DNA from: Malacoraja senta
Taxonomy: Eukaryota
Direction of reading: 5' to 3'
Assembly: GCA_038087875.1 (NCBI GenBank)
Contig: CM075982.1
Location: 20,832,001-20,896,000, forward strand
DNA: 64,000 bases
The position numbers were made by a program, and so were the translations under genes. Below, one piece after another: positions 26,292 to 60,524 of this stretch. A model generated the notes under the pieces. That model was not told where the DNA came from. It saw only the letters and a list, made by a program, of their open reading frames with translations, and made no database searches. Positions within the stretch are counted from its first letter, which is position 1, and every line of letters starts with the position of its first letter.

Positions 26292-26425
26292 ATGGCGGCT
26301 CCGGCCCTAGGCTTCTGCGTGTCGGCCTTGGCCAGGCACTCCGTCGCCGCACTTCGGGCTATCGCCGTGTGCCGCGCCTGCAGCATTGGCCAGCGCCATC
26401 AGCAAGTCCGGCTCCTATCATCCAG
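26292..26425 (+). CDS. POLDIP2: POLDIP2 exon 1 (mitochondrial presequence-like)
   Basis: gtcATGGCG start context; Arg/Ala-rich with no acidic residues, ending ...RLLSS; donor AG|GTAAGG. Confidence 0.9.
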
Positions 26426-41400: not shown

Positions 41401-44400
41401 AAGGTCACCCCTTGGCTTCAATGCACCGGGGGAAAAACACTAGCCTATCCAGGCTCACCTTATAACTCATACCCTCCAGTCCCAATCATGTGAATCTCTT
41501 TTACACCCTTTCCAGCTCAATGACATTGTACCTAGGGTGACCTTGACTACTCTGCTATTAGGCCTCAGGCACTGAGAATTTAATTCAAGCTAATAGCAAG
41601 TGCTAACAGAAACGCTGAATATTCATGTCCTTCATTAACTCCAGCTCATAAAACCCATACTCCACTCTATTCCCTCTTCTTTGTATTTTCTGATTAAAAG
41701 GTAAATGTATTTTCTTTTCCGCTCTCTCTGTTTAGGAGCCGGTTCTATCGAAGGAGCAGCCTGCATTTCAGTACAGCAGCCACGTCTCACTGCAGGCACC
41801 CAGTGGTCACATGTGGTGAGTAAGCCCGTTGCTGCAGTTAGATCCAGCTTTGTGATTGCCTCACTGTTTGCTGCATTGCCTGGTTTCTATGAAATGAAAC
41901 CATTTGGAATGGAGTTGGTCTATCTGCACAAATATAGACCCTCTGTGTGGCACAGCAGGTAATCTGTGTGTTACAGACATACAAATGCAAAGGTCCCTCC
42001 TTTATCTAGCACTTGTATTTGCCAGGATGATTGGAGCAAGGTTGATACAATTGTCAGATTATCTAGCAGCAAAATCAACCAAGGTTCTTGTACTAATCAC
42101 TGAAGGGGCATTGCTGTGTGTGTGTGTTTTTGTGTAAGTGTAAATGTGTGTGTAAATTTGTGCATATCCAGGGAGCACCATCAGAGGATTATGGCCTGTC
42201 CCATGATTGATTTCTTGTTTTTGTGTGCACTTTCGGAACAAGAGAAACACATAAGGGATACTATTTCTTTGGGTGTTTGTAACAGCGGTGGAATGCTTTG
42301 ACTTAACTTTGGAGATATCCATTTTTAACTTCCAGCTGCCTGCTAGTATCCTGAAGCCTGAAACAAATGTTTACCTCTTCCTAACCAGGTGTCATGCTGT
42401 CGTTTCTTCACCACTACTTACTGCTCAAACCAACCAACATCTAACATTGTAATAATTGACAATCTTGTCAGGCATTTTTACTCCCCCTACCCCGCCCCAT
42501 ACCAGCATGGAAAGCCATGTGATTTTGTTTAAAGCTGCTGAAGCTTGCTTACTGTGAACCAATGTTTGAGGTTCAAATCTCTGCTTTAACAGTACAGCTT
42601 CCATCTATGGATAGAAAAATAGAGGTAATGTTTCAGGTTGAAGATCCTTTGTCAATTCTGAATCCTCAGCATTTTCTGTTTTGTTATTTTTAATATTTTT
42701 TTAATAGATTTTCAAACTTCCTCCCACTATCGGTCACCAGGGTTTACAGTTAAGGGCCTGTTCCACTTGGTCATCATTTACTCGACAGGCCGGTATTGAC
42801 TGACGCGCGACGGTCGCGTGCGTCATCATGCGTCCGCACAGCCGTCTGGAGCGCGTGATGTCATTTGAAGATAGACACAAAATGCAGGAGCAACTCAGCG
42901 GGACCGGCAGCATCTCTGGAGAGAAGGAATGGATGATGTTTCGGGTCGAGACTTCTTCAGTCCGAAGAAGGGTCTCGACCCGAAACGTCACCCATTGCTT
43001 CTCTCCAGAGATGCTGCCGGTCCTGCTGAGTTACTCCAGCATTTTGTGTCTATCTCCAATCGTCTTGGCCCCACTCTGGGAGTAGGAGTGGGGACAGATC
43101 TGGATCCACAATGGTCGTGAGCCCCAGGCAGAGGTCGGCGATCGTTTGCCTGCTTCTGCTGCTGTTGGAGGTGAGACGTTGCGCCGCGTCAGGGTCTTGG
43201 GCCTGTCCCACTTTGGCTGTCAGTTACGCGACAGGCCGGTGGCGCGCGAAGATTTCGTACATGACAAAATCCACACTCCTCCACACCACTCCATGCGCCT
43301 GTACCACGCTACCCACCCACTAGCAGGCCGCGTAAATGGCACGCAAATGACGGCCAAGTGGGACAGGCCCTCTAGTCACTAATGAAGTAGAGGTCCAGCC
43401 AGGAAGGCATGGGAGCCCCAGTGTCAAAACGGAACTATCCCAGAGACATATTCAGTGGGCAAAATTAGCATGCATTTGTTGTAGCTGTTAATTATGTGGT
43501 CACTTTTTGTGACTAAGTGGATAGATAGTCAAGTCAAGTCAAGTGAGTTTATTGTCATGTGTCCCTGGTAGGACAATGAAATTCTTGCTTTGCTTGAGCA
43601 CAACAGAACATAGTAGGCATTTACTCCCAAGGCATTCTATAAATATATACACAATGGTCAATATACTGATAAAGTGCAAATAACAGTATTGGCTAGTAAA
43701 GTTCAGTGTTATGTCCGAGCCAGGTTTAATAGCCTGATGGCTGTGGGGAAGTAGCTGTTCCTGAACCTGGTCGTTGCAGTCTTCAGGCTCCTGTACCTTC
43801 TACCTGAAGGTAGTAGGGAGATGAGTGTGTGGCCAGGATGGTGTGGGTCCTTGATGATGCTGCCAGCCTTTTTGAGGCAGCGACTGTGGTAGATCCCCTC
43901 GATGGAAGGGAGGTCAGAGCCGATGATGGACTGGGCAGTGTTTACTACTATTTGTAGTCTTTTCCTCTCCAGGGCACTCAAGTTGCCGAACCAAGCCACG
44001 ATGCAACCGGTCAGCATGCTCGCTACTGTGCACCTGTAGAAGTTAGAGAGAGTCCTCCTTGACAAACCGACTCTCCGTAATCTTCTCAGGAAGTAGAGGC
44101 GCTGATGTGCTTTCTTAATAATGGCATCATTGTTCTCGGACCAGGAAAGATCTTCAGAGATGTGCACGCCCAGGAATTTGAAGCTCTTGACCCTTTCAAC
44201 CATCGACCCGTTGATATAAACGGGACTGTGGGTCCCCATCCTACTCCTTCCAAAGTCCACAATCAGTTCCTTGGTTTTGCTGGTGTTGAGGGCCAGGTTG
44301 TTGTGCTGGCACCATATGGACAGTTGCTCGATCTCTCTTCTATACTCTGACTCATCCCCATCAGTGATACGTCCCACAACAGTGGTGTCATCAGCGAACT

Positions 44401-47400
44401 TGATGATGGAGTTCGCACTATGTCCGGCTACGCAGTCATGAGTATAGAGTGAGTACAGCAGGGGACTGAGCACGCAGCCTTGAGGTGCTCCCGTGCTAAT
44501 TGTTATCGAGATAGATAATAAGCAAGAGAGTGAAAGCCCTGTCCCACGGGCAGGTGGTTACTGGCGGTGACGCGCGGTGTAGCAGGAAGTTGGGACCGCC
44601 AGGGGACCGCGCATGGCCCGCAGGGTCGGTCCCACGCAGATCGCCGGAACCGTATGTAGTTGGTCCCGACACCGCGCGGTGCTCAGAAAAACTGACACTG
44701 TCCAAAAATCTTGGCCTGCCGACCAGCCACCGCCTCTTCACCGCGAGCACCGCCTGTACGCCGCGAGCACCGCCTGTCACGATGTCATCGCGTAGCACGT
44801 TGCGTTGCGCGATGACGTCATCACCCGACGCCGCGCTCGCTGCATGCATTCGCATGCTCGTGGGACAGGCCGTATGGTAAACACTCGGCCTCCGTGCGGC
44901 AACCGCTTCCGGTTAGGTTGCGCTTGCCGCATGCTCGTGGGACCGGCCATACGGTGAACACTCGGCCCCCCAGCGCGGCGCTCCCGCGGTAGCCGCGCGG
45001 TCCCTGCTTCCGGGGATACCGCGCTTCACCGCTGTTACCGCCTGCCTGTGGGACAGGGCCATGAGAGGTTGCCAAGTGTAGACAGGAATGTGGTACTGAG
45101 GTTACTATCACAGCATTGTCTTGTTGAATGATGGAGCTGCCCTTAGGGATATAGCATCCTACTTGTGCTCTTTATTCATGTGTTCATATGTGCTGATTAT
45201 CAATTTGTTGCTTGAAGGCCAAAACTAACTGAAGTATAAGGACATTCGTGCACTGCTCACAAAGGAAGCCGATGTTTTATTTAGCGGTCTAATTCACTGA
45301 TCACGAATTCAACTATGCTTGCAGGCTGAACGAGGTCATTAGTTTTGAGGTGTTTACGTGACTGCTGACTCTTTGCTTTTTGACTAAAGTTACTGACGGA
45401 CTTTTGTCTGCTGCCTGACTTGCTTCACTGCTGCTTTCCCGTTCTGGCTTCTGTCTCTTGGAGTGATTGTCCAGGCTGATGTATATTTTTTAATCCTTAT
45501 TCTTCTGCAGGATGTGAGTGTAGCTTGCAGAGCTGGCACTTTTTGCCCTTCCGCTGTGGCCATTTCAGAAAGCAGTTAAGAGCAGTTTGGAGCATCCACG
45601 TCACAGCACCAGAGACGTGGTTCGATCCTGACCTCGGGTGCTGTCTGGAGTTTACATGTTTTCCCTGTGATCATTGGGGTTTCCTCCCACATCCCAAAGA
45701 CTTGGAGAGTTGAAGGTTAATTGGCCTCTAAATTGACCCTGGTGTGTAGGGAATGGTGTGAAAGTGGAATAATGCGAATCTAGTGTGATTGAGGAATCAA
45801 TGATCAGCTTGGACTCAGTGGGTGAGGAGCCTGTTGCCATTCTGAATTAATGTTTATATCAATCTAATTAAATTCCATACACCATTGTTTTGCACAGTTT
45901 AACAGCTGATCAGTATTATCCTGTATTTTATGACTATCCTCTCATTATAGAAATCTTTGCTAATTTTCCTGTCATCGGCAAACTTGCTAACTCCAGCATT
46001 CGCGTTCAAATTATTAAATGTATATAACATACAGTAAGGGTCCCCGTGCTGATCCGGGCTTCCAAATACAGACGCAGACCATCTCCACCACCCTCTGCCA
46101 ATTTTTAAATCAATTTTATCTTGGATCCCATGAGCTTTAACCATTGGGGACAGTGTCCCATGTTTGACCTCGTAAAAGGTCTTGCTGAAGTTCCATTTGT
46201 CATTGCCCACCAATATATTTTGTTATTTCTGAAAATTGCAGTCAAATTGTTCAGATGGGATCATGCTGCCGCACCCGCTGAGTTTCCCCAGCACTTTTGT
46301 CTACCTTCCCTTTATTAAAGCCATACTTACTACCTATCATTGATCCCTGCCTATTTAACCGCAGATTAATCATGTTCATTAAAATTATTTCCAATAACCT
46401 GACATTGGACTTGCAGGTCTATATTTACCAGATATATCCCTGCGTAAAGGTACCAAATTTCCTGACCTCATCTTGTCACCTCACCTGTGGCCAATGAAAA
46501 ATGTATATATCTGTTTTGGCCCTTCCTCCCATAGCAACCTGGGACACATCTTGTCGTCTTTAATGATAACATCTTCCAGAATCCTCTCACTGAATCCCCC
46601 AGCTACAATTCCCTGGTAATATACGTGGGAAGCATTAATTTAACACCTTGCTTCCATCCTCTGGCTCCACACACACAGATTGCTGTTTTGATATCTAATT
46701 TTATGATTATTCTTTTCCCCTAAATATTACTTTAAATCTGCTTTGGGGTCTTCTGTTATCATGTCCATCAGTGATATTTCACACCCTCTCTTTTCTCTCT
46801 GAATTTCTCATTTAAATACCTCCATACAATTTCTGTACTGCTGAATGTCGTCCCCTATTTTCAGTTCTCTGTGCCTGCCATATGTTTGTTTTTTTGTCCA
46901 GCCATCCAGAGTTCCATGACTTCCCTGATAGCAACATGCTGGCCCTGAACTCTCCTACAATTTCCCTTTTGAATAACTACTTGTCAGATATAAAACTGCC
47001 TTTATGTAACAGTTCCCAAGCTACTTTTGTCAGGTGGTGTGCTATTGAAATTGAACTCTTCAATTTCAGGACCCGTTTTTCCCCAAACCATCCCCTTCCA
47101 AGGCCCTTTTCATAACTACCTTGAAAATTAAAGACACATTGACTCAACCTCCAAAATGCTCTCTTACTGACACTTTGGCCACCTGTCATTGACAGTCACT
47201 GATATTAGGTCAGGTTTTGACCTTTTTCCATCCAAGTACTGCCTCAAACAGCTTGCATGGATGCACTTAAAAATTCCACCCCTGCTACTTATTTCACACT
47301 AAAGCCATCCCATTTAATTTTGGGCATATTGAAACCCCCTATTATTATGGCACTATTACTCTTGCATTCTCTTTTATTTGTCGACATGTCTGCTCCTCTA

Positions 47401-50400
47401 TCTTCTGGGTGCTGTTACAAGGCCTGTTGTCTACTCCCAGCAGATTATTCATTCCCATTATTATTCAACCCTGGAGGGAAATTGGTCTGCCAACGGTCAC
47501 AACACACAGCAAGGTCCATCTACCTGGCCTTGAGATATCCTCCCTCATTTTTTTTTTCCAATAATGGATTCCCTAATCAACATTGCACTGCTACCTCCAT
47601 TGCATGCTGCCCTTTCATGCATGAGGATTTTACAGCTTGGAATGTTGAGCTACCAGTCCTGCCTGTATTTCAACCATGCATGCCTCTATAATAGCAACGA
47701 TCATACTTCCAGTTGTTGGGCAATGCTCCTTAAGTTTAACTGCTTTACCAGTCAGACTCCATGCTTTAACATAGATGCAATTTAAACTCTCATATGCCAG
47801 TCAGACTCCATGCTTTAACATAGATGCAATTTAAACTCTCATATGCCTGATCTCATCCATGACTGATCTGCATTCTTGACTTTCGTACCTTTGACTGCAT
47901 CTCACCACACCACTCACCTCTTCCTCCCAAACGGTACATATATTCTGTTTCCCATCCCTGAATACCTTAAGGTCATGCTCTTTTATCTGTGATCTAGCTT
48001 TTTAAATTTATGTTGCAAGAATTATCACATTTTTCTAAAATTGTTGGTACAAAAGTTGCCTACAACTTCTGTTTGTTCACCCTCTCCCCTTAGATTGCCA
48101 CACAACAGTCTTTTGACATCTTTGACCCTGGGGCACTAGTATGGCAACATACAATCCTAGATTCATGTTTATGGCTTTAGAGATACCTGAATTTCCATTA
48201 TTGTCAAGTATCCTACCACCATTGGCCTTGCTGCTTGTTCCTTCCTCGGCAGTTTAGTTGCTCTTGTGCCAGGTTGGACTTTTCGGAGAACATCCCCCTG
48301 CCCCCCCCCCACCACCCCATCCACCACTATCATCATCATTGTCCAACACAGAAATATTTTGGAGTTATATTCACTCTGATGTTTGCCTGACTACAGGCCT
48401 GCCTCTCTCCCTCTGCCTGGTGATCACCCATTCATTTTTTGACTATCTTTCCTTAAGTTGCTGAGTGGCTACCTCCTAATACCTATCAGCCGTATAGATG
48501 CACTGTAGTATTTGCAATGGCCATTCATTTTGTAAAACCCTGTGCTTAAACTGGCCCGACAGGAGGTACTTCCCACAGATGTGGTCATCCAGCCCACAAG
48601 GAGTGCCCTGGAATTCCCATGTGCTGCAAGTCATGCAACACACAGTGCTGCCATCGTTTTTGGTGTAGAAAGAACTCCTTAAAATGTAACCTGAAATGTA
48701 CCTAGTTTTATATAAACTACAAAATACTCACTAACTAACTACCAGACTTGCACCTATGTCCAGCTAAGGGCCAATGTCTAGAAAATTACACAGGTCCTGT
48801 CACCAAAGCCCTCTTAATCTTTTCCCTCAATACCCTCTCATCCCTGGAACCCCTAAATATCTGAACATCTATTGAGCTCTCAGCTTGAATATACACAACC
48901 ACTGATCCGCTTCATTTCCTTGAGTCCAAGAGCCCTGGTCCTGAATATGTGTCGTTTGTTTAACGTCCTCGAGAGATCCCAGGAACCTTTGTTACAGTCT
49001 CTCGCAAATATCTTTCCTTGGTTAGGGAGACCAGAAATTATTCCAGGTGCACTCTCATCGGGGCTTTATATACTTGAAACATAGCATATTCGTATCCTCC
49101 AGTAATTAAGGCCAACATTTCTTTTGCCTTTGTAATTGCTCGTTGAACCTACCTGTTGACTTTGTGACTAATATTCAGTGACATCTGGCTCCTCACAACA
49201 CCCATGCATTTAATTTCCTCCCTGTTTGGAATATCCTCCATTTCAATTTTTTAAACTAAAGCGAATGACTTCCCATTTCCCACATTACCTTGGGACAAGT
49301 GGGGTGCAACAAAGGTTCACATGGAGTCCTCGGTTTGAGAGGACATTCCTTTGAGAGATTAAGCACACCACACCAGGCAATCTGATAAATTTCTCTATTT
49401 ATCCTTCAGCTTAATTTTTTTTTAAATCGTGACATTTCACCAGGGAATTATAATATTGGTCATTGGGACAGTTATGAGGCAGTGAACAAAGCTTCACAAA
49501 AAAGTTGTTGGAAGCATCTTAAAGGAGATATAAAGATTTAAGATGGGTGGCTCTTCACTTAGACATTGACAGCCACTAACAGTGGAGTGGTGTAAGATGA
49601 GGATGCTCAGGAGGCTTTGGATGACTGGAAATAAAGATAGCTTGGAAGGTTGAGCTGAGAAGCTCCATGAAGGGTGGCACGCTGGCGCAGCGGTAGAGTT
49701 GCTGCCTTACAGCGCTTGCAGCGCCGGAGACCCGGGGTTCGATCCCGACTACGGGTGCTGTCTGTACGGAGTTTGTACGTTCTCCCCGTGACCTGCGTAG
49801 GTTTTCTCTGAAATCTTCAGTTTCCTCTCACACTCCAGACGTACAGGTATGTAGGTTAATTGGTTTGGGAAATGTAAAAATGATCCCTCGTGTGTGTAGG
49901 ATAATGTTAATAATAGTGTTAATATGCGGAGATCGCTGGTCGGCGCGGACCCGGTGGGCCGAAGGGCCTGTTTCCGCGCTGTATCTCTAAACTAAACTAA
50001 AAAAGTTCACTGGTGTTGTCATAAGCTAATATGCAGGACTTTTTAAAAATAGAAACAAATTGGTTTAGAGGTTGGAAGGTTGCCTTGTATGTCATTAGCT
50101 GGTGCTATTTCTCTGCCCTACTTTTTGGTGGCCTTGGGTTTGAGCCCGAGGGAGACTCCTAAATAGGAATAGACCAAAAACATAATGGAGACCCGTCCAC
50201 AGTTGGTGTCTCGGAAGTAAACTACAAAGCTCAGCTTGCTGCTGGTGTTGGCCTGTGAGATTTGTTGCTGTCTTAAAAGTCCATGCTAAATCTAAATTGT
50301 TCCTGCTGCATGGCTCCAATGGGCTTCCCGTGGAGCTGGTGCCAGTTTTATGCTAGATCACAGGCTAGCATGCCATCTGTTATATTGCTAAATCCAACCC

Positions 50401-53400
50401 TTCCTTCCCCTAGCAGAGTCTTCTGTTGAGGGTGGCAGCCACTGGTTTCAATGATGTGAATGTATTGTAAGCAGATGCACAGATAGTGAATGAATCTACC
50501 ATGCCCACAGGCTGCTGGACATATCCTGTCCAGGTGATAGGGAGCTTATGTTTGCAGCGATGATGCTTCCTCTGCAGTACATGACTGGCTCCTACTCGTT
50601 TTAGGTATCTTTCTCAGCTCATGAGATCTATTTTTTGTCAATTGTTCGACTGATTTTGTGCATTTCTTAAAATTTTGCTCTCTAAATTTCATTTGAGATT
50701 TTCATGCTCAGTCTTCGAATACAAGATGCATGAGATATTAGTTATGTTCTGGCATTTCCCCCCATGACCTTCTAATCTTCAATATGCAAATTGGGCTTCC
50801 CATATAATCCAGCCTAATTTTCACAACCTAATTATTCCGAACCACTTCAGTGCTCTCTGGTGGATTTATTCCCAGCTGTCCATGGGATTCAGCCAACTCT
50901 TGCTCAAAATTAATCTGGTGAATGTGCATGAGGATTAAGAGCAGGGAGAGGATTTACTGAATGGCTGGAATGTAGTTATGCAATACCATTGTTTAACAAG
51001 AGAAAGGGGACAACTGTGTAACTGTGGGTCCGTTGGGCTGCCAATGGTGGTGGGTAAAAGATGGATAAAATTCCAAGGGATGACATAAATTGAATATTGA
51101 TACGGTTGCAATTTTGTGGATCTTAGTGCGATGTTTGGTAGAGTCGACACAACAATCTGATCATCAAAGAGAAGGTCGATGGGATCTGGTTGAAAAATCG
51201 TCTTGGTTGAAAAATGAATTTGGTGGCCGAAAACAAAGATAATAGATGATAAAGGGTTTTAGTGATCAGAGGGTTGTATGTAATGGGCTTCCATAGAGTT
51301 CACTCATTTGTATTTTTGTAGTGCATTGGACTTGGATATAGTGGTCATAATCAAGATGTTCACTTCAGGTACCAGAATGAGTGGTGCCGTTGGTACTGAG
51401 GAGGAATGTTTTGGGCTGTAGAGGAGTTCAGTGGGACTCATGTGCAGATTAGCAGATGGGATTCAGTGCAATATACTGGAGCAGCGTGATCTCACTGGCA
51501 CTGTCATCAATTGGCCAACAGCGTCAGTGGGAAGGATGTGACAGCACCAGAGGGGTGCAGAGGATGGTACCAAGATGGAAATTATAATTGATGAGAAACT
51601 ATCATAGTAAAGATAGCTGTTACCATAGCGGTTACCCATGTCCCTTTACAGGAGGTAAGTGACAACGTTCATGAGAGGAGTTGGAGGAGGGAGAATGGTA
51701 TGCAGAGTCTGAAGAAGGGCTCCCGACCGGAAATTACCTATCCATTCCCTCCAGAGATGCTGCCTGACCTACTGAGTTACTTCAGCAATTTGTGTTTTGC
51801 AGGCAGAGATTTGTTTATTGATTGAAGTGTTGTGAGTTGCTGAAATGGTGAGGGCGGGCCACACTCCTTGATGACCGTCACAACCTGCTGGGTTACTGAC
51901 CGAGAGTTAGGAAATGCGTCACGAAATCCAGTCACTCTTGGCCAGCAAGGATACAATGAGCTGAATGATCTCTGCCAGAGCTGTACATTTCAGTAATTAT
52001 GATGTCCACTGGGGATTGCTTTAGAGACCTCTGTCTTGGGACTCAGCAATTTCTGCCCTTAGGATTTCTCTCCCCCCACCCTCATTACCCAACTCCTGGA
52101 GCCCATGTAGGGTTGTCTAGGTCACTGATTGCCTGCTTATGCTTTACTAAGTCAAAAAAACATACTTTGTGTATGCTAGGGTCACCCATTGAGCTTGATT
52201 CTCCTTTCCAGGAGGCTTGCTGCAGTTGGAGGTCTGTGTTAGACTTTCCCTTCCAGCCCCACACTTTCCAGCATGGCTGAGCTCAGGACAGACAGGGAAC
52301 CATCCCTTGAGTCTCAAGTGCAATATGTGGGGTCTGCAAACATTTTGTGATTCTCTTGTATCTCCTTAGGATCAGTGTCCTAATCATGTTTGCTCAAACT
52401 TCTGAGAGTTGTCTTGGGGTATTTTATTATATTACAAATGGTGCATTAGTTCTGAGAAAGACTGATTTGGATGGGAATGTGTTAATAAGAGCTTATCCAT
52501 GGGTACTGTACTCACAAGAGGCTATGAACAAACCTTCCCTTTAGATTTTATCCCAGTTAATCCCCTCCCTTCCCACTTCCCTAGCCTTACTTCCATAGAT
52601 ACTATAATCAGTTGTTGGGGGCCATTTCCGGAGACTGATCTTGTCTCTGCATTCCACAGGGGTTCCTATCGCTTTGAGAGCACCAACCGGAGTCTCCTCG
52701 ATGTTCGTATTCCACCATTCTCCCTCGAAAGCAAGAACGGCGACTCTCCCAATGGGTTCTTGCCAGGCCCATTCTCCTCCTTAACCTAAGTACGAGGTAG
52801 TTACTGCAGTCTCTCACTACAATGATAAAAAGTGTAAAGGTAGCAATAGACTTTGGGGAAATAGGTTTGTGCTGCCCCCATTCTGTGGACTGCCTTCCAT
52901 GGTAAAGAAGTTCAGTTAGGCTCCACAATAACCAGGAGGAGAGGTATCTGTTCCTGTTGGATAAAACTGACTATCACTGTAGAATGATGAGAATTTCACC
53001 AATTCATACTATGATGCTGTAATGATAGGTACATTTATGGCATTGCTGCAGCAGTTTGTAGACATGTATTACATGATTGGGCAAGGGCATACCATATAGT
53101 TTGTTAGTGCAAGAGTGTGATTTTTTTCTGTTCTCCTTTGTCAGTATTTTAAATAATCGCATCGATTACCATGCCTCATTTGCTGCCTCTGACCAATATT
53201 GAATGTACTAAGCAATATGTCAGGCTATTATCTAGGATTGTTGTAGGTGATCTCTGAATTAAAATGTCACCTTATTACTTCGAAGGAATATTGTAAGCAG
53301 TGGTACTGTTTCTTTAATTATTCCCCAATGTAGATGTCACCAGCAAGCCCACCATTTAATGCTCTTCCCTAGTCACCTTTAGGAAAGTGGTGGTGAGCAT

Positions 53401-56400
53401 CTTCTCGAACTGTTGCTGTTCCTCTGGTGATAATTCTGCCAGTTCTGTTGGGTTGGCCTCTTATTAAGGGCTTCCAGTCAGAAAGACATCCATCCAGCGC
53501 TGTCCTCTGCGTTCTATCACCAAACCAATTTTGTATCCATTTCGTCAACACACCTTGGATCTCTTGAGCCTTAACCTTCTGAGAGCCTACTATGCAGGAT
53601 TTTGTCAAAAGCCTTAAACATGTCTATTGCTCTAGTTACCTCCTCAAAATACACGGATTTGTGAGATGATATCCTCTGCAGAAAGTCGTTTTAACTCGTA
53701 ATCAGTCCCAGCCTTTTCAAATGAACATAAATCCTGTCCCTCAGAATTTTTTCAGCTTCCCTACCCACCATGTGATGCTTCCTGTAATTTCCAGGCTTAT
53801 TTCCACTGCCTCTCTTGAATAGAGACAACATGAGCTTTCCTGCACTGTTCTGGTACTTAATCCATTGCAAATGAAGTTTCAAAATTCTCCATCAGTTCCC
53901 AAGCAACCTCCCTTCCCCCCGCCTTCCCCCTTTTCTTCCCTTTGTATCCTGAGATAGATTTTTATCATGTTCTAGGGAATTTTCCACTCTGATGTAGCTC
54001 CAATATTTCTTCTGTCTTTCTGATACAGACATGCTCCATAATACTAGTATTTCCCTCCCATCTCCAGCTTCCACGTCCTTCTTACTGGTGAATAAACTCG
54101 GTGGCGGAGCTTCCATAACCCTCTTGTGGAGAAAATTCTAGAGATTCACCACGCCTTGGGTGATATTTTTGTCATCTCTGCCCGGAATATCCAACTACGT
54201 ATGAGACTGACTCCTTATACTGATACCCCTGCCATGGGAAATATCTCTGCATCTATCTTGTCACATCACTCATTGATTCAGAGACTACCTTGCATTCTGC
54301 TAAACAGTGGAAAGCACAGTCCTTGTTTTTCTAATGCTTGCTCCCTGAAAGTGACACACAAGTAAATAGAGTGGTAAAGAAGGTATGTGGTATGCCTGCC
54401 TTCATCAGGAAGATTCATTGTTTTCTCTGGAACGTCAGAGGTTGAGGCTAGACCTGATGGAAGTACATTAAAATTATGAGAAGCATACATGGGATAGACA
54501 ATCAGAACCCTTTCCCCACAATCAAAATGTCAAGGACTAGAGGGCATAGCTTTAAGGTGGGAGGGGCAAAGTTCAAAGGCGATGTACAGGGTAAGATATT
54601 TACACAGAAAATGGTGGGTGCCTGTGTTGTGCTGCCAGGGGTGGTGGTGGAGGCAGATATAAAAGTGACGTTTAAGAGGCTTTTAGATAGGCATGTGGAT
54701 ATGCAGAGAATGGAGAGATGCGGATCACATGTAGGCTGAGGAGATAACTTGGCATCATGAAGGTATGTGGTATGCCTGCCTTCATCAGGAAGATTCGTTG
54801 TTTTCTCTGGAACGTCGGAGGTTCATTGTCGAAGTATCTGTTCCTGCGCTTTACTGTTCAATGTTCTCATTTCTGCTCATCCAACTTAAGCCTGAACTCC
54901 ATCTGAATATTCATCACTGTTCCACCATGGCAAGTTTCCCCTTGGCAATGAAGCTCAGACATAATATTCCAGGTTTAGTTTCACCAGGGCCCTGTAATTA
55001 AGCAAGACATCCCCACACTTTTAATTCAATCCTCTTGAAATTAAAGCTAATATTCAATTTAAATAGGTCCAAATGGTGAGATATTTAGGAGTTCCAATGC
55101 ATGATTTACAAAATGTATCGTAAAACTCCATTAATCCAGCATGCTCAGGACTTTGGTGTCAGACTGGCAATTTTCTGGACTATTGGACATCATTTCTATT
55201 GGCAATCCAACAGATTTTCAATTTCACTTCTTTGTTAAGATGTTAGAGTAATATAAAGATTCTAGTGTACCGGGTAGGTTTAAAGGGAACCTGGAAAATG
55301 GGGCCCTAGTGTGTTTCAAGGGAGCATGGAAAACAGGCCCAGGTGAGTTTCAAGGGAACATGGGAATCGAGGCTCTGCTGCGTCAAAGGGAGTGAGGGAT
55401 TGGGCCCCGGTGAATCAAAGGAATGTGTAACAGGGCCCCAGTAAGTCAAAGGAAGTGAGGGAATTGGGTCCTGTGAGTCAAAGGGAGTGTGGGAATCGGG
55501 CTGTAGTGAATCAGTGGCCGAAGTATCTGGATTTCTGAACAACAAGCTATAGGATTAATGGGAGGTACACAAAAATGCTGGAGAAACTCAGCGGGTGCAG
55601 CAGCATCTATGGAGCGAAGGAACTAGGCAACGTTTCGGGCTGAAACCCTTCTTCAGATTAATGGGGTTTGGCAAATAACACTGTGAACTAACAATGTTAT
55701 TATTAATTGCTTTGGGAATTGTTTACATAAGTGGAGGTGTTATACTGCAGTTAAATAGATGTTGCTGAGACCACTTGGAATATTGTGCACAGTACCAACC
55801 TTATTTAAGGAAGGATATTAATGAATTGAAAGCAGTTCCGATAAAATTTGCTGGACTGGTACAGAAATAGGCTGGTTACGCAACGAGGAATAGTTGGACA
55901 GGTTGGACTTGTATTTCCTGGAATTTGGAAATGTGAAGCAATTTGACTGAAAAATAAAAGATCTTCAGGGGACCTAACAGGATGGATGTGGTAAAAAAAA
56001 AAAAAATTCCTTTTATTGAAAAATATAGAACTGGAGGCTACTGTTAAAAAGCAAGAAGATTTTTTCTCTTAAAAGGTTGTGACTCGGCAACTTTCTACCT
56101 CAAATGTTTGTGAAAACAGAGTTTGTATATATTTACGACAGACATGGGTGAATTCTCAGTAAACAAGGGGTGTTGATATGATTCATGTCCTGTGTTAAAC
56201 GTGATTGGGTTGGGAGATGGGGTAAGAGGCTATAGAGGTTACCTTGTACAGGAAATGTGAAGAGTGTTAGGAGGGGCAGGGTTGTTCGGTGTTTTGGGTG
56301 TGTTGTGGAGCTGTGCTAAAGCAGATGGACAGATTGCTGCTGCTTATTACTGTTTGCACCTTTCACAGGGGCTCGTTCACTTTCCGAAGGCCAGGCAGCA

Positions 56401-58435
56401 GCACCTTCGATGTTTCCATCCCATCCTTTTCTCTCGAGAGCAGTAGTGAGGACGGCGGGCCCTTCTCCTCCCCGGTCTGAGTATTTGCCTCCAGCAAATG
56501 ATGGAGTAACTAAACACAGTCTGCACTCAGGATCTTTCCTCGAACCAGAGCACCAGTGGACCCAACTCCAGGGGTGGTGCTGCCTGGACAAAGATGTGGC
56601 ACATCACCAGCCTCCGTACAGGGACACGTGGCCAGTTCCGCTATAATATGCGCACTCACTCAGGCTTCTGTTGGGGGTTAGATTTGGATGGAGATGGATG
56701 AGGAGAGTGGAGGCAGGTAGATTTGGATGGAGATGGATGAGGTGAGTGGAAGCAGGGTAAATGTGGAGTTTGCTGGTGTTGAGTTTGGGTTGGGGTTAAT
56801 TAATAACATATTAATTAGGAGCAGGATTGGCTTCTTGCTAATTGTCTTGTAGTCCAGGAGCACTCTTTTGGAGAAACAGTGCTGTGTGCTTTCTCCGTGT
56901 TACTGGTTTTATGAAGTCTGCTGTGTTGTGAAGTTATATAAGAATCAGACCACTGGAGACAGGACAATAGTGTACACCTGGTACGTGGGAGCCCAATATG
57001 TCTAACGGTATGGATGACCTATGCCAATGCTACAAAACAGTTCCAGATTCTGTCTTTTGAACTTGTTGCTATGGCAACATTTTGTGTTAAGCACTGGGGT
57101 ACTGTACTGATAGGGACGGTTCTGTCTATACCACAGGTACAGTACTGGTGGAGACTTCTGTCACTGTATAACACTGGGGCACAGTACTGGTGGGGACTTC
57201 TGTCATTGAGTAACATTAGGCTATTGTCTGTTTAGTCTGGGTCCAGTAGTGGTAGATACTGGTCTATTACTGTCTAAATTTGATTGGTACATGTCTCCCT
57301 ATGTAGCAACGGGGGCAATATTGGGCTTGTCTCTACACCAGAAAGCGATAGGTACAATTCAGGTGGATTAACAAGCACAGAAATGTTTGATTAAAGCAGT
57401 GACTCTAATTGGTTCTGCCACTGTTGCCACACTGGCAGTATGGAATTATTGAATACCCTGGAGCGGGGCATTACTTGTGTCTGAACGTCTGTGCTGATTC
57501 AGATCCAACCCTGGTGATTGCTGCTGTTGCCTTGCTGAGCTACAGAGCCATTGGATGCAGCAGATGATCTGCCAGGTGGGTCCTTGGTGTCTGAGTTTAG
57601 CAAGCAGTTGGGATTTGGACAGTTCTGGATCCAGGTTATGTTAGGAGTGCTGCTCTTCAGCATTTTGGGAAGGCTAGGTTTAGCCTTGTGAGGCCACACA
57701 CAGTTACCAGCGATCACTGTATGAAAACCCACCCAAAGAGCACCTGAGTGAAATTTGCCACAGATTGTAACCTCCACTTGCCTACATTTGGAATGGATTT
57801 ACCAGGTGTAGTGTGTTACTGCTGGTGTCCCTGGTTCCATGGTGCATACTGTGCTTCATTATTTGCTGTGCCTATATCTGTGTGCTCCTGCTGCTGATGT
57901 TTATTGACTAGTTTAAATAAAGATTTTTGTTTGGATTATCTGTTTTCCCCCTTATTAAATGTTAGTATATGGTATCCCAGTGTGAAATCTTCTACCCCCA
58001 CGGAAAGCCTAGCACTTGGTGGCAGGGCCCAGTGGAAGGAGAGAAACCAGCTGCATTTCCTGCAGGAAGTGGGGCAACAAGTGCTTGTGGCCCAAGAGAA
58101 GGCACCTGAAGGTGCAGCCTGTGGAGTATCTGTTACACCACGATAGGGCGCATCAGTAAAGGCTGCACCTCGGGGAACCACCTGGGTGACAGGGAGAGCT
58201 GACACAACCTATCTGAGTGGAGAATTCAGACCCTGGTTGCTTTGTTCCTGTGCCAGGGACTGCGGCCTCAGGCGCAGTAGAGTTGTATCATTTAATCTGC
58301 TCCTTTCATCCTGTCTACAGGGGGACGTTTCGCTTTGAGAGGCCCGAGGGTTCACAGCTTGATGTGCGGATCCCACCCTTCTCCCTGGAGAGCAATAAGG
58401 ATGACAAGGCTCCCCCTGCTGGCTACAGCTGGTAG
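26292..58435 (+). CDS. POLDIP2: POLDIP2/PDIP38 (YccV + ApaG/DUF525 domains), canonical isoform 360 aa; join(26292..26425,28090..28171,29573..29670,31333..31432,32897..32972,34912..35019,36687..36823,37663..37689,39117..39242,41736..41815,58321..58435)
   Basis: The spliced translation closely matches vertebrate POLDIP2 (RNRPEGKVLETVGVFE...YYQVLID...AWQEKNHPWLELSDVHRETTENIRVTVIPFYMGMR...WRYCIRLEN...GHMWGTFRFERP...VRIPPFSLESNKD). All introns are GT-AG and in phase. Confidence 0.97.
26570..26765. repeat. GC-rich tandem repeat in POLDIP2 intron 1
   Basis: Repeated ccgggtaccgtcccggcccgg / gggcacggtcccggcccggtg units. Confidence 0.75.
27157..28074 (-). mobile_element. Young 5'-truncated CR1 LINE with an intact 273-aa ORF2 tail and (TTTCTATG)n tail
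   Basis: Uninterrupted GGSVSCEGDARRLQGDLDRLGEWA...RPHLEYCVQFWSP...QRVVNLWNSLP. Confidence 0.92.
28090..28171 (+). CDS. POLDIP2: POLDIP2 exon 2
   Basis: RNRPEGKVLETVGVFEAPKQQGKYETGQ. Confidence 0.95.
28700..29295. mobile_element. Nested HE1/V-SINE-like elements: a minus copy (~28795-29095) inside a plus copy
   Basis: SINE head at 28700, an inverted full copy, then the plus-strand body resumes and ends in ctaaactaaact. Confidence 0.7.
29573..29670 (+). CDS. POLDIP2: POLDIP2 exon 3
   Basis: LFLHSVFGYRGIVLFPWHARLYDRDVASSSPD. Confidence 0.95.
31333..31432 (+). CDS. POLDIP2: POLDIP2 exon 4
   Basis: KPETSGTQGSKEVKGKTHTYYQVLIDTRDCPHI. Confidence 0.95.
32897..32972 (+). CDS. POLDIP2: POLDIP2 exon 5
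   Basis: SQRSQTEAVTFLANHDDSRALYAIP. Confidence 0.95.
34912..35019 (+). CDS. POLDIP2: POLDIP2 exon 6
   Basis: GLDYVSHEDILPYSSSDRSPIQHELFDRFLSYDSAK. Confidence 0.95.
35194..35294 (-). mobile_element. Penelope-derived short element; 15-bp TSD TGATTGATAGTTTAT
   Basis: TSD at 35179-35193 and 35295-35309; hammerhead core on the minus strand. Confidence 0.8.
35980..36550 (+). mobile_element. Degenerate CR1 3' fragment
   Basis: Recognisable CR1 ORF2 end and 3' UTR. Confidence 0.65.
36687..36823 (+). CDS. POLDIP2: POLDIP2 exon 7
   Basis: LPFVARDTLRAWQEKNHPWLELSDVHRETTENIRVTVIPFYMGMR. Confidence 0.95.
37663..37689 (+). CDS. POLDIP2: POLDIP2 exon 8 (27 nt)
   Basis: EAQNSHVYW; flanked by ttgcag and GTAAGT. 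Confidence 0.93.
39117..39242 (+). CDS. POLDIP2: POLDIP2 exon 9
   Basis: WRYCIRLENLGTEVVQLRERHWRIFSLSGTLETVRGRGVVGR, containing the ApaG GxGVVG motif. Confidence 0.95.
41736..41815 (+). CDS. POLDIP2: POLDIP2 exon 10 (ends in phase 2, ...GHM-TG|)
   Basis: EPVLSKEQPAFQYSSHVSLQAPSGHM(W); donor TG|GTGAGT. Confidence 0.95.
42753..43371. mobile_element. TIR element (MITE, possibly PIF/Harbinger-like) with a nested palindromic Penelope-derived repeat (~42868-43055)
   Basis: Ends AGGGCCTGTTCCACTTGG ... CCAAGTGGGACAGGCCCT; CpG-rich interior. Confidence 0.7.
43528..44510 (-). mobile_element. Young 5'-truncated Rex1/Babar-like LINE (254-aa intact RT C-terminus; (ACTTG)n tail)
   Basis: LSPLLYSLYTHDC..IIKFADDTTVVG..FKFLGVHI..QRLYFLRRL, with no stops. 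Confidence 0.9.
44534..45061. mobile_element. CpG-rich MITE with GCCCTGTCCCAC TIRs and 3-bp TSD TGA
   Basis: tga|AAGCCCTGTCCCACGGGCAGG ... CCTGCCTGTGGGACAGGGCCA|tga. Confidence 0.75.
45511..45513 (+). CDS. POLDIP2: Candidate 3-nt POLDIP2 microexon (GAT), inserting Met: GHMW-M-G
   Basis: ttttttaatccttattcttctgcag|GAT|gtgagt: a strong acceptor directly followed by a consensus donor; frame-preserving. Confidence 0.5.
47748..47847. repeat. 49-bp perfect tandem duplication
   Basis: ccagtcagactccatgctttaacatagatgcaatttaaactctcatatg, twice. Confidence 0.9.
49672..50003 (+). mobile_element. Near full-length HE1/V-SINE-like tRNA-derived SINE
   Basis: tRNA-like head (tggcgcagcggtag A box, ggttcgatccc B box), V-core, and CR1-like tail ending (TAAAC)n. 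Confidence 0.85.
52660..52789 (+). CDS. POLDIP2: POLDIP2 alternative terminal exon 11a
   Basis: Acceptor ctctgcattccacag in phase 2; (W)GSYRFESTNRSLLDVRIPPFSLESKNGDSPNGFLPGPFSSLT* is paralogous to the canonical last exon. Confidence 0.8.
54350..54870 (+). mobile_element. CR1 3' fragment with a ~64-bp internal duplication (54379-54442 and 54760-54823)
   Basis: [19 protein letters not shown] remnant; repeated aaggtatgtggtatgcctgccttcatcaggaagattc. Confidence 0.7.
55280..55512. repeat. ~30-35-bp degenerate minisatellite
   Basis: Repeated gagtcaaagggagtgagggattgggcccc-like units. Confidence 0.7.
55563..55655 (-). mobile_element. Penelope-derived short element; 10-bp TSD GATTAATGGG
   Basis: TSD at 55553-55562 and 55656-55665. 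Confidence 0.75.
56369..56480 (+). CDS. POLDIP2: POLDIP2 alternative terminal exon 11b
   Basis: Acceptor tttgcacctttcacag in phase 2; (W)GSFTFRRPGSSTFDVSIPSFSLESSSEDGGPFSSPV*. Confidence 0.78.
57090..57270. repeat. ~40-bp degenerate tandem repeat
   Basis: cactggggtactgtactg / cacaggtacagtactggtgg / cactggggcacagtactggtgg units. Confidence 0.65.
57916..57950 (+). terminator. Candidate poly(A) signal for the exon 11b isoform
   Basis: AATAAA at 57916-57921 followed by U/GU-rich gatttttgtttggattatctgttttcc, upstream of the 11c acceptor. Confidence 0.5.
58321..58435 (+). CDS. POLDIP2: POLDIP2 canonical terminal exon 11c
   Basis: (W)GTFRFERPEGSQLDVRIPPFSLESNKDDKAPPAGYSW*, the closest of the three to the mammalian C-terminus. 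Confidence 0.95.
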
Positions 58436-60324
58436 ATGGCCATCCGCTGGACCCTGACCTCGCAGGGGCTGCTGCTGCTGCCTGGAACTGAGGGGAACGG
58501 GGAGAAGCGAAGGAGAAAGTCTTCGAGTCAGCCTGTTGCAAATGTCCTGGGTTTGCTGTGTAAAACCTGATCACGTTGTTGTAAAGCTCCTTTGAAATTG
58601 GACTCTGGGACTGATGTATTATTGAAGGAGGAAATTATGGGTTGTAGGGGGTTAGGGCACGGAGCGATTGGGATGAAGGAAAGGTGGAATGGGAGCTGGA
58701 AATTCTTTGCTGCACATATTCAGATGTAGTCAGTCTTGGAAGGTGGAATGGAGTTAGGTTTCTCTGCTCATCGATATTCCTGTCAAGTAACTATCCAACC
58801 CTTTTCCCTCCCAACCCTACCCATGCATATTTGAATGAAGCAGCATAAAAGCAGGAAGAGGTGTCCACGAGCAGTGCGGCTCTCAGTGGCCAGAACCCAG
58901 CCAGCTGGCCCAGTCTGATTGGTGTCTCACCTGCTGAAAGTGTCCCCACTGGAGACATTGAAACACTACCTGCAGCGAAGGTGAATTTCCAGCATCTTCT
59001 TTCTCCTGTGTCTCTATTCTTTCACCTAAGCCACTGAGTTCTTGTCATCATCCTGCACATAGTGGCTGAATTTCCATATAATCCGTGGCTGATACTCTGT
59101 GTTCACAGGATGAATGTTGCCGGCCCTGGTTTGTTCTGGCCTTTTCCTGCCTCCAGAGCTCCCCTTCCCCTCCACCTCCCCACTTCCAGTCTGAAGAAGA
59201 ATTCTGACCTGAAACATCACCATCCCTTTTCTCCAGAGATGCTGCATGACCCACTGAGTTACTCCAGCTATCTTTGGTATAAATGAGCATCTGCGGTTCC
59301 TTTAATCTGTGTCAGCCAGCTGGTGTCTGGAGAGGGCCAATTGGAGGTAAGGGGCATGGGTGCAGCCCATGGCTGCGGGCTATATCACCGACTCCAGTGC
59401 AGATCTCCTTGGCTGGCCTTGCCTCAGATTGGCAGGGTGTTGGTATGTATGCTGTTGCCACTCTTGGCCCCACTGCCGGTTGGTTTCTGCTCCACGCCGG
59501 GTGCTGCCCTGGCTGGGTGAGTCGGTAGATCAACAGAGACCTGTCAGTATGGCCAGGTCTGATTCCTGCTTTCTCAGACTGGAGCCAAATGCACACTGTT
59601 AGCTTAAGGAGCAAAGGAGCATGTCTGACACAGTGGGCGCTGGGGATGGCTGAAGTCCCTGAGCAGCCCTTGGACAGACGATAGATTCAGCTGCCCTTCC
59701 GATCCCTTAACTGAGAACACTGCTTTCTCCCTTGTGCTTCCTGCTTCCCTTTAAATATTAACTGGGAAGGCATTTAAAGAGGGGAATCCTAAAAATAATT
59801 TTATTACCAACAGAGGCAAGGCCGTTCAGCCCATCGAGCTGATCCCCGACCCATGTATTTGCTTCCTATGGTATGCAGTGCCCGTTTGAATGATCTAATG
59901 GATGTGCTGTCCCTGTCCTGTGATGCCCACAGATGCCAGCAGAGGGCTGTGTCACTCAGTGACCAGTATTTGTGGGGAGGTTGTAAGATTTAGCTGGGAT
60001 AAATAATTTCCTGCTGGGAATGGCAGGAATGTGCTCCGCTGATCCTGGCAGGAGACCAGCACTGGGGAATGTGCTGCCTTCCCCTTCAGCGACTGTGGAG
60101 TGCCGGAACTGGAATTTAGCCCTGTCCTTGCAATGAGCCAATGGGCTGGACACAGAGAATGTGGCACCCAACTCTTGCACTGACTCTGTCTGTTATTAAT
60201 CTGCTTTAAAATCATTCCCAGATGGTGCAGGGCGAGGTTTGTTCCAAAGTGTTTCAGTCTGTCTATACTTAACCCCTCAGCAACCTCCATCCCAGTCTGC
60301 AGGTTTATGCCCCGTGGTCCCCGT

Positions 60325-60524
60325 NNNNNNNNNNNNNNNNNNNNNNNNNNNNNNNNNNNNNNNNNNNNNNNNNNNNNNNNNNNNNNNNNNNNNNNNNNNN
60401 NNNNNNNNNNNNNNNNNNNNNNNNNNNNNNNNNNNNNNNNNNNNNNNNNNNNNNNNNNNNNNNNNNNNNNNNNNNNNNNNNNNNNNNNNNNNNNNNNNNN
60501 NNNNNNNNNNNNNNNNNNNNNNNN
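60325..60524. other. Assembly gap (200 N)
   Basis: Run of exactly 200 N. Confidence 1.

What the first reader, a model, noticed from the sequence alone, without database searches (positions are those of the whole stretch)
52660..58435. POLDIP2 carries three tandem paralogous terminal exons that could swap the end of the ApaG/DUF525 domain
Seen in sequence: exon 10 ends in phase 2 (...GHM-TG). Three separate downstream exons each start with G after a pyrimidine-rich CAG acceptor, complete the Trp codon and stay open to their own stop. 11a (52660-52789) reads WGSYRFESTNRSLLDVRIPPFSLESKNGDSPNGFLPGPFSSLT*. 11b (56369-56480) reads WGSFTFRRPGSSTFDVSIPSFSLESSSEDGGPFSSPV*. 11c (58321-58435) reads WGTFRFERPEGSQLDVRIPPFSLESNKDDKAPPAGYSW*. 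All keep the G-[ST]-aromatic-x-F...DV-x-IP-x-FSLES pattern at identical spacing, while codon third positions and flanking introns have diverged. That pattern suggests purifying selection rather than recent duplication or decay. Established knowledge: human POLDIP2 is known with a single terminal exon like 11c. This exon completes the Ig-like ApaG/DUF525 domain, which has been proposed as the substrate/partner-binding module of this CLPXP adaptor and polymerase partner. Inference: mutually exclusive last-exon choice would give 365-, 359- and 360-aa isoforms with different binding surfaces and different 3' UTRs. I am not aware of this having been described.
Basis: partly seen in the sequence, partly recalled or inferred. 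Interest (0 to 1): 0.92.

Follow-up and report, generated by a model that had tools for sequence, protein, structure and literature searches.

The report
Three alternative POLDIP2 end exons, skate
A skate's POLDIP2 gene carries three ancient copies of its last coding exon; all three are transcribed, giving three different protein tails, and they are kept from sharks to bony fishes and already listed as isoforms in public annotation, though I found no paper on them.

Summary
Three paralogous copies of the POLDIP2 last coding exon lie at 52660-52789 (11a), 56369-56480 (11b) and 58321-58435 (11c). Each has a CAG acceptor, the same phase and its own stop.

All three are used. Transcriptome contigs from three related organisms show a GT..AG joint 52789->58321. 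So in skates 11a is not a terminal exon. It is a cassette exon whose TAA abuts its donor, and it is spliced on to 11c, which then serves as 3' UTR. Contig depth suggests inclusion from none to nearly all between samples.

11b is a true alternative last exon. It has a 1.46-kb 3' UTR ending about 15 nt after AATAAA (57916). 11c is the orthologue of the human last exon.

The trio, in the same order, is present in three other skates, a horn shark and a sturgeon. RefSeq already lists a-, b- and c-type isoforms in many cartilaginous and ray-finned fishes, so the array predates their split.

Across four skates, variable columns are 0/130, 5/112 and 3/115 in the exons against 16-30% in distal flanks. 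Each type keeps its own tail.

Two points fail: 11a's exon type and 3' UTR, and the novelty claim. What the three tails do is inference.

The parts
41736..41815 (+). POLDIP2 exon 10 (EPVLSKEQPAFQYSSHVSLQAPSGHM + TG of Trp), shared donor TG|gtgagt
   Evidence: 100% to skate POLDIP2 residues 297-323
52618..52867 (+). Block around 11a conserved between skate and horn shark (82.5% over 251 nt). It covers 42 nt of upstream intron and 78 nt of downstream intron. TCTCT lies at -16 and +21 of the exon.
52660..52789 (+). Exon 11a. A cassette exon that codes (W)GSYRFESTNRSLLDVRIPPFSLESKNGDSPNGFLPGPFSSLT*. Its TAA is the last 3 nt, directly followed by the donor gtacga. It is spliced on to 11c.
   Evidence: joint 52789->58321 GT..AG in X2 (depth 96.8) and X9 (depth 9.9). 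X2 record 8 = 26 nt + exon + 30 nt of 11c. Depth is 0 at 52820-53419; 0 of 130 columns vary among four skates; held by at least 14 RNA-type runs.
56369..56480 (+). Exon 11b coding part: (W)GSFTFRRPGSSTFDVSIPSFSLESSSEDGGPFSSPV*
   Evidence: contigs start at the acceptor (56368), one with 26 further upstream letters, and run on unspliced; 97% to Rhinoraja isoform X4; in-frame 3-nt indel in two skates.
56481..57936 (+). 3' UTR of the 11b form. AATAAA at 57916-57921; contig end at 57936.
   Evidence: X1 records 5 and 6; depth 10-16, then falling. (poly(A) signal); 57888-57956 conserved to horn shark, about 1.4 kb after its 11b.
58321..58435 (+). Exon 11c, the orthologue of the human last coding exon: (W)GTFRFERPEGSQLDVRIPPFSLESNKDDKAPPAGYSW*. 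It is coding in the c-form and 3' UTR in the a-form.
   Evidence: 6z9c, E 1e-15. X1 record 7, 1786 nt, runs from upstream exons straight into 58320..
58436..60312 (+). 3' UTR shared by the c- and a-forms. It is seen at least to about 60312; then an N gap at 60325-60524; AATAAA at 60567.
   Evidence: X9 record 29 has 1693 letters beyond 58619..

Best explanation
This is the 3' end of the POLDIP2 orthologue of a skate (family Rajidae). Its last coding exon was triplicated in tandem before cartilaginous and bony fishes split. All three copies accept the exon-10 donor in the same phase (TG|G = Trp), so one gene makes three proteins that differ only in the last 36-42 residues.

c-form: exon 10 is joined to 11c. 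This is the form that mammals have.

a-form: 11a is included as a cassette exon between exon 10 and 11c. Its stop codon is the last three bases of the exon, so translation ends there and 11c becomes 3' UTR. A stop at the last exon junction should not trigger nonsense-mediated decay (inferred from the 50-55-nt rule).

b-form: exon 10 is joined to 11b. The transcript is not spliced further and is polyadenylated about 1.46 kb downstream at a conserved AATAAA.

Each exon encodes the end of the second-last strand, a loop and the last strand of the ApaG/DUF525 beta-sandwich, then a flexible tail. The core pattern G-[ST]-aromatic-x-F...[DE]-V-x-[IV]-P-x-FSL-[ED]-S is kept, so the fold closes the same way. 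The loop, two strand residues (b-type has VS/A-IPS where a and c have VR-IPP) and above all the tail are specific to each type and conserved within it.

Shown: anatomy, transcription, the splice joint, the poly(A) end, conservation. Inferred: that the three tails act as type-specific short linear motifs that tune which partners or compartment this multi-partner adaptor serves, and that 11a inclusion is tissue-regulated.
For: Sequence anatomy.

Transcription and joints: the GT..AG joint 52789->58321 is seen in two runs of two organisms. The 11a and 11b contigs each carry 26 unaligned upstream letters. That is the number expected for 31-letter-word contigs that branch from one shared exon followed by the shared GGG (27+3+1 = 31; the 27th exon-10 letter aligns to the intron's last G). 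11a depth against 11c depth is 0/272, 97/62, 3.5/9 and 22/31 in the four runs. 11b contigs run unspliced to 57936, about 15 nt after AATAAA. The 11a exon is held by at least 14 RNA-type runs of 5 organisms.

Annotation in relatives: a-, b- and c-type ends appear as RefSeq isoforms in skates, sharks, chimaera, bichir, sturgeon, paddlefish and teleosts.

Same a-b-c order in Leucoraja, Amblyraja, Rhinoraja, Heterodontus and Acipenser genomic loci.

Within-type identity is 0.81 (a), 0.57 (b) and 0.86 (c), against 0.37-0.47 between types.

Four-skate alignment: 0/130, 5/112 and 3/115 variable columns in the exons, against 16-30% in distal flanks. 11b has an in-frame indel. Skate against horn shark, pN/pS is 0.05 for 11c and about 0.5 for 11b with low pS.

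Intron flanks of 11a and 11b and the 11b poly(A) region are conserved to horn shark.

AlphaFold models of the a- and b-forms give a strand-loop-strand hairpin (pLDDT blocks 83-86 in the a-form, 64-83 in the b-form) followed by a tail of pLDDT about 30. The human crystal-structure paper reports a mobile C-terminus and a last strand (beta15) that contacts the N-terminal beta0 strand (PMC8138528).

The upstream flank is colinear with the Vma12/TMEM199-bearing flank of Rhinoraja.
Against: The RNA evidence is Logan contigs, not reads. Their depth is a poor measure of expression, and missing contigs do not prove absence. So the 0-to-nearly-100% switch of 11a is indicative only, and the tool itself guessed X1 and X2 to be 'probably DNA'. 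Against that guess stand the empty introns and the splice joints.

The 26 upstream letters were not shown, so exon 10 as their source is inferred.

One organism-B contig reads 8 nt past the 11a donor (52797). This may be a second donor 7 nt downstream or unspliced RNA.

No protein-level evidence exists for the a- and b-forms.

11b is the least constrained: 57% within-type identity, and 2 of 4 changes in organism A are non-synonymous.

Both structure models have low overall confidence (mean pLDDT 55 and 44).

Tetrapod genomes could not be searched, so loss in tetrapods is not shown.
Confidence: 0.85

Rival explanations
1. One reading: three mutually exclusive terminal exons, each ending its own transcript with its own 3' UTR.
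For: It holds for 11b and 11c. In sturgeon and in a teleost-like contig, an AATAAA lies 120-250 nt after the 11a stop and there is no GT at the stop. There 11a may well be terminal. One organism-B contig runs 8 nt past the skate 11a donor. An ATTAAA about 470 nt after 11a is kept in three skates.
Against: The joint 52789->58321 is seen in two organisms. Depth is 0 in all four runs from 52820 to 53419. The TAA|GTA donor is kept in all four skates.
Confidence: 0.07
2. 11a and 11b are regulatory, unproductive exons. Their inclusion lowers output of the c-form or changes the UTR. Their peptides do not matter.
For: 11a is conserved even at synonymous sites, and intron flanks are conserved. This pattern is also typical of poison exons. 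pS of 11b is low.
Against: The a-form stop sits at the last junction, so decay is not expected. Type-specific tails are kept from chimaera to teleosts at the protein level although the DNA changed (74.6% DNA identity skate-sturgeon against a conserved SPNGFLPGPF tail). 11b has an in-frame 3-nt indel. No copy in five genomes carries an inner stop.
Confidence: 0.05
3. 11a and 11b are decaying relics of an exon duplication, with only noise splicing.
For: Horn shark 11a has a frameshifted tail. b-type sequences are rather divergent.
Against: Open frames, acceptors and order are kept in every locus examined across the cartilaginous/bony-fish split. 0 of 130 columns vary among skates, against 20-30% nearby. 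11a depth is equal to or above 11c depth in one run.
Confidence: 0.02

Closest known systems
Human POLDIP2/PDIP38 (PDB 6Z9C, 6ZLX)
   Same: Same gene by sequence, domain order (YccV-like + ApaG/DUF525) and neighbourhood with TMEM199/Vma12. 11c matches the last 37 residues of the human protein at E 1e-15. The last exon supplies the final strands and a mobile tail.
   Different: To my knowledge human and mouse have one terminal coding exon only (c-type). I could not search tetrapod genomes here. The skate has two further paralogous exons in use.
RefSeq/UniProt POLDIP2 isoform models of fishes (e.g. Rhinoraja longicauda X1-X5, Heterodontus francisci X1-X3, Carcharodon carcharias X1/X3, Acipenser ruthenus X1-X3, Myripristis murdjan X2, Polypterus senegalus X3)
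   Same: They carry the same three tail types. The 11a peptide is identical to Amblyraja, Leucoraja and Rhinoraja models, 11c is identical to Rhinoraja, and 11b differs by one residue.
   Different: These are automatic models without description. They do not say that 11a is an internal stop-bearing exon in skates, nor that the three types are ancient orthology groups.
Tandemly duplicated, alternatively spliced homologous exons (mutually exclusive exons), as catalogued in vertebrate genes (own knowledge)
   Same: Adjacent paralogous exons of like length and equal phase. Only one is translated per mRNA. They are ancient, strongly conserved and have conserved intron flanks.
   Different: They sit at the 3' end of the gene, and each carries its own stop. 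Exclusivity comes from a stop codon (a against c) and from polyadenylation (b), not from the splicing-level exclusion of classical cases. The a-form mRNA contains two of the copies.
Alternative last exons and stop-bearing cassette exons
   Same: 11b behaves as a skipped alternative last exon with its own poly(A) site. 11a behaves as a cassette exon that brings in a stop.
   Different: The alternative ends are homologues of the default end, not unrelated sequence. So a folded domain is completed in every form.

Membership tests
POLDIP2 orthologue | YccV-like (PF08755) plus ApaG/DUF525 (PF04379) architecture | tested here: met
   Window exons match skate POLDIP2 proteins that carry both Pfam domains, mostly at 80-100% identity per exon.
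POLDIP2 orthologue | Head-to-head neighbour TMEM199 (Vma12) | tested here: met
   A Vma12 gene lies on the opposite strand upstream in Leucoraja, Amblyraja, Rhinoraja and sturgeon. Window 15729-26291 is colinear with that Rhinoraja flank. Adjacency in mouse is stated in PMC8687530 (abstract).
Alternatively spliced homologous (tandem-duplicated) exons | Adjacent paralogous exons with the same phase and similar length | tested here: met
   130, 112 and 115 nt. All begin with the G that completes Trp. 53% protein identity.
Alternatively spliced homologous (tandem-duplicated) exons | Each copy conserved in orthologues as its own type | tested here: met
   Three types from cartilaginous to ray-finned fishes. 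Within-type identity 0.57-0.86, between-type 0.37-0.47.
Strict mutually exclusive exons | Mature mRNA holds exactly one of the copies | tested here: not met
   The a-form mRNA holds 11a and 11c (joint 52789->58321). Exclusivity holds only for the translated part.
Alternative last exon with own poly(A) site | Transcript ends downstream of the exon at a poly(A) signal, with no further splicing | tested here: met
   For 11b: contigs run unspliced from 56368 to 57936, AATAAA lies at 57916, and the region is conserved to horn shark. For 11a in skates this is not met: depth is 0 after 52820 and the exon is joined to 11c.
Poison (decay-triggering) cassette exon | Stop more than about 50-55 nt upstream of the last exon junction | tested here: not met
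   The 11a stop is the last 3 nt before the junction. Decay itself is not testable here.

The most novel reading that the evidence does not exclude
The three tails are distinct, anciently fixed short linear motifs that split the many roles of POLDIP2 among isoforms. These roles include CLPXP adaptor, polymerase/PrimPol partner and NOX4/CHCHD2 partner. The tails are: a, ...SPNGFLPGPF-x-SL-x; b, ...GP[FY]-x-x-L-[VLF]; c, ...NKDDK-x-PP-x-G-x-x-W. Inclusion of 11a would be switched between tissues. Mammals would then have kept one third of an ancestral jawed-vertebrate isoform set. The hydrophobic ...SL[VAI] ends of the a- and b-forms could act as C-terminal recognition tags, for example for CLPX or PDZ-type binders.
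Probability: 0.25. Interest if true: 0.65.

Novelty: new member of a known kind. Interest (0 to 1): 0.42.

Why it matters
POLDIP2 is a puzzling multi-partner adaptor whose ApaG/DUF525 domain is thought to bind substrates. The sequence comparison shows that fishes have kept three alternative ways of finishing that domain since before cartilaginous and bony fishes split. Each has its own conserved tail, and contig depth hints that one switches sharply between samples. This gives a natural set of variants for asking which partners depend on the last hairpin and tail. It also raises the question of why mammals are known with one form only. For genome annotation, it explains why some fish models are named 'POLDIP2-like'. 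It also explains some faulty models, such as read-through fusions and frame-shifted joins.

Tried and rejected
Searches that gave nothing:
- Rfam scan of 41000-60000: no family.
- Literature searches for POLDIP2 with alternative last exon, mutually exclusive exons, exon duplication or zebrafish isoforms: nothing relevant.

- Read laying failed twice as busy and worked on the third identical try.
- The exact look-up of the c-form of Rhinoraja failed, because only the longest product per gene is on record. The a-form with a 10-kb flank was used instead.
- The first two contig look-ups used a flank too short to reach 11c and were repeated.

Readings considered and dropped:
- The GxGxxG motif needed for CHCHD2 binding lies in the exon 9/10 region (GRGVVG), not in the alternative exons, so it does not explain them.
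- The GT right after the 11b stop (TGA|gtattt) as a donor. It is 'at' in Leucoraja, Amblyraja and horn shark, and no such joint was listed.
- Motif scan for splicing regulators: only TCTCT at -16 and +21 of 11a is conserved. It is too short to count as evidence.

Weak results:
- Structure models had low overall confidence. I used them only for the hairpin and tail, and made no fold search.
- The representative search with the 11a peptide found only four mis-called ORFs on genomic Logan contigs of unknown fishes. These served as stepping stones to full-length proteins.
Full report
OBSERVATION.
- Exon 10 ends ...GGT CAC ATG TG|gtgagt at 41815.
- Three exons begin with G directly after a cag acceptor, at 52660, 56369 and 58321. 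They stay open to TAA (52789), TGA (56480) and TAG (58435).
- A six-frame motif scan finds these three copies and no other in the window.
- 11b and 11c are each 53% identical in protein to 11a, and the DNA has 65% mean column identity. The flanks do not align with each other.
- tblastn with skate POLDIP2 proteins places exons 1-10 at 26292-41816.
- The upstream flank is colinear with the flank that holds the Vma12/TMEM199 gene in a related skate.
- 11c matches the C-terminus of human POLDIP2 in PDB 6Z9C at E 1e-15.
- The 11a peptide is identical to the RefSeq proteins of Amblyraja radiata, Leucoraja erinacea and Rhinoraja longicauda, while other exons differ. So the window comes from another skate.

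ARE THE EXONS USED?

(i) 11a. A GT..AG joint 52789->58321 is present in X2 (depth 96.8) and X9 (depth 9.9). X2 record 8 is 26 letters + 11a + 30 letters of 11c. No run has any depth from 52820 to 53419. So in skates 11a is an internal cassette exon. Its TAA is its last three bases, its donor is the gtacga right behind, and it is spliced to 11c, which then is 3' UTR.

(ii) 11b. Contigs begin at the acceptor (56368) and run on unspliced. X1 record 6 ends at 57936, about 15 nt after the AATAAA at 57916. Depth then falls. So 11b is a real alternative last exon with a 1.46-kb 3' UTR.

(iii) 11c. In X1 a 1786-nt contig runs from upstream exons directly into 58320. This is the canonical form. Its UTR reaches at least about 60312.

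(iv) The shared upstream exon. The 11a contigs (X2, X9) and an 11b contig (X9) each carry 26 unaligned letters upstream. With 31-letter words, contigs that branch from one shared exon followed by the shared GGG should keep 27 letters of that exon, one of which aligns to the intron's last G. That is what is seen. So both exons hang on the same upstream exon. I infer this; the letters were not shown.

(v) Depths. Depth of 11a against 11c is 0/272 (X1), 97/62 (X2), 3.5/9 (X3) and 22/31 (X9). 11b is at 5-16. X1 and X2 are the same organism and study, so 11a inclusion seems to switch strongly between samples. Contig depth is a poor measure, and absence of a contig is not proof.

A second index search finds the 11a exon in at least 14 RNA-type runs of five organisms, and not in X1.

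CONSERVATION. A search of 1.84 billion representatives with the 11a peptide gave four mis-called ORFs on genomic Logan contigs that end in 11a-like peptides. Stepwise searches from these reached full-length proteins.
- 11a-type ends are annotated in Narcine, Amblyraja, Callorhinchus, Hemiscyllium, Polypterus, Polyodon and many teleosts.
- Cluster members show all three types as RefSeq isoforms of single genes. Rhinoraja longicauda has X1/X2 = a, X4 = b, X3/X5 = c. Heterodontus francisci has X1 = a, X3 = b, X2 = c. Carcharodon has X1 = a, X3 = b. Acipenser ruthenus has X1 = a, X3 = b, X2 = c.
- b-type ends also occur in Myripristis, Centroberyx and Lampris.
- Genomic loci of Leucoraja, Amblyraja, Rhinoraja, Heterodontus and Acipenser all hold the three exons in the order a-b-c, with acceptors and open frames.
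- Mean identity within types is 0.81 (a), 0.57 (b) and 0.86 (c). Between types it is 0.37-0.47.
- The single invertebrate end (amphioxus, molluscs, insects) looks like a mixture: GTFRMER.DG as in c, and SLESKSDDSP.GF as in a.

So the triplication is older than the split of cartilaginous and bony fishes.

SELECTION.
- In a four-skate alignment, variable columns are 0 of 130 (11a), 5 of 112 (11b) and 3 of 115 (11c). At more than 100 nt from the exons they are 16-30%.
- 11b differs in two skates by an in-frame 3-nt deletion.
- Skate against horn shark: 11c has pN 0.03 and pS about 0.6. 11b has pN 0.11 and pS about 0.19. 11a is inflated by a horn-shark-specific frameshift in the tail.
- In organism A, 11b has two synonymous and two non-synonymous changes.
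- Constraint ranks c > a > b, with extra constraint on silent sites of a and b.
- Between skate and horn shark, the conserved block around 11a extends 42 nt upstream and 78 nt downstream. Around 11b it extends 69 nt upstream and 128 nt downstream. The 11b poly(A) region is conserved too. Around 11c only about 15-18 nt are conserved. This is the usual signature of regulated alternative exons.
- The donor TAA|gta is kept in all four skates. Horn shark keeps only a GAG|GTA 7 nt further on, which skates have as well. Sturgeon and a teleost-like contig have no GT at the stop but an AATAAA 120-250 nt later. So the way 11a is finished may differ between lineages.

WHAT THE EXONS ENCODE. AlphaFold models of the a- and b-forms of Rhinoraja were poor overall (mean pLDDT 55 and 44). 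In both, the exon-10/11 region forms strand-loop-strand, followed by a tail with pLDDT about 30. In the a-form the strands are residues 320-330 and 335-345, with pLDDT blocks of 83-86. The paper on the human crystal structure reports a mobile C-terminus. It also reports that the last strand (beta15) touches the N-terminal beta0 strand and the YccV-like domain (PMC8138528).

The core residues are shared by all types. The differences lie in:
- the loop: ESTNRS in a, RRPGSS in b, ERPEGS in c;
- two strand positions: b-type has V-S/A-I-P-S where a and c have V-R-I-P-P;
- the tail, which is type-specific and conserved: a, K..D-SPNGFLPGPF-x-SL-x; b, GP[FY]-x-x-L-[VLF]; c, NKDDK-x-PP-x-G-x-x-W.

The GxGxxG motif needed for CHCHD2 binding and the N-terminal strand said to bind CLPX lie outside the alternative part.

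MECHANISM, WITH STATUS.
- Shown: one donor and three acceptors in one phase. 11a is a stop-bearing cassette joined to 11c. 11b is an alternative last exon. 11c is the default.
- Inferred from the 50-55-nt rule: the a-form escapes nonsense-mediated decay, because its stop lies at the last junction.
- Inferred from conservation: all three proteins are made, and the tails are functional short motifs.
- Weak lead: TCTCT at -16 and +21 of 11a in all skates would fit repression by a PTB-type factor.

COMPARISON AND NOVELTY. The kind is known: tandemly duplicated homologous exons used alternatively, alternative last exons, and stop-bearing cassettes. The isoforms themselves are already in RefSeq and UniProt for many fishes. 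Six full-text searches found no paper that mentions them.

What this work adds is:
- the three ancient orthology groups;
- the internal-exon nature of 11a in skates;
- the conserved 11b poly(A) site;
- the strength of constraint.

I rate it a new member of a known kind, of moderate interest. Whether tetrapods lack 11a and 11b could not be tested with the tools. None turned up among the candidates of the protein searches, which is weak evidence.

The earlier scan note on this window (s1-189514, a candidate 3-nt microexon at 45340-45530) concerns another feature. It did not affect this reading.

Noticed in passing
window 50687-50954: A 272-nt block inside intron 10 is 78.7% identical to horn shark (L008:74670-74938, E 1e-58) and colinear with the exons. 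It is AT-rich, has no ORF over 48 aa within it and no Rfam match. It is probably a conserved non-coding element.
   Followed up: partly
window 55563-55657: A SINE-like repeat (…GCTGGAGAAACTCAGCGGGTGCAGCAGCATCTATGGAGCGAAGG…) has summed word depth of about 3e5 in X1, X2 and X9 and about 4e4 in X3, with many contigs branching at its ends.
   Followed up: no
L008:93198-93321 (Heterodontus francisci): The horn shark 11a exon has a 1-nt shift in its tail (…SPMGSCLARSLP* instead of …SPNGFLPGPF…). Other sharks are intact. It may be a lineage-specific change or an assembly error.
   Followed up: partly
window 56474-56480; proteins P0059, P0061: Scyliorhinus torazame RefSeq isoforms X4 and X2 appear to join 11b to 11c through a donor inside the last codons (…CTG|GTCTGA), judged from their peptide sequences. 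The result is a frame-shifted end or a fusion. The same GT exists in the window (CCG|GTCTGA). No such joint was among those listed.
   Followed up: partly
protein P0007 (Bagarius yarrelli): This 405-aa model reads through from an 11a-type exon into an 11c-type exon. It is probably an annotation artefact caused by the exon array.
   Followed up: no
window 52644-52648 and 52810-52814: TCTCT lies 16 nt before and 21 nt after 11a in all four skates. The upstream one is also present in horn shark. It is a PTB-like motif but too short to be evidence.
   Followed up: partly
window 52790-52797: An organism-B contig (X3 record 15) runs 8 nt past the 11a donor and then has 2 unmatched letters. This fits a second donor GAG|GTAGTT 7 nt downstream, which is the one conserved in horn shark. 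It could also be unspliced RNA.
   Followed up: no
window 60325-60524: A 200-N gap lies inside the shared 3' UTR, just before the AATAAA at 60567. I left it as it is.
   Followed up: no
L009:18889-19300 (Acipenser ruthenus), L001: In sturgeon and in a teleost-like Logan contig, the 11a-type stop is not followed by GT, and an AATAAA lies 120-250 nt downstream. There 11a may be a true terminal exon, unlike in skates.
   Followed up: partly
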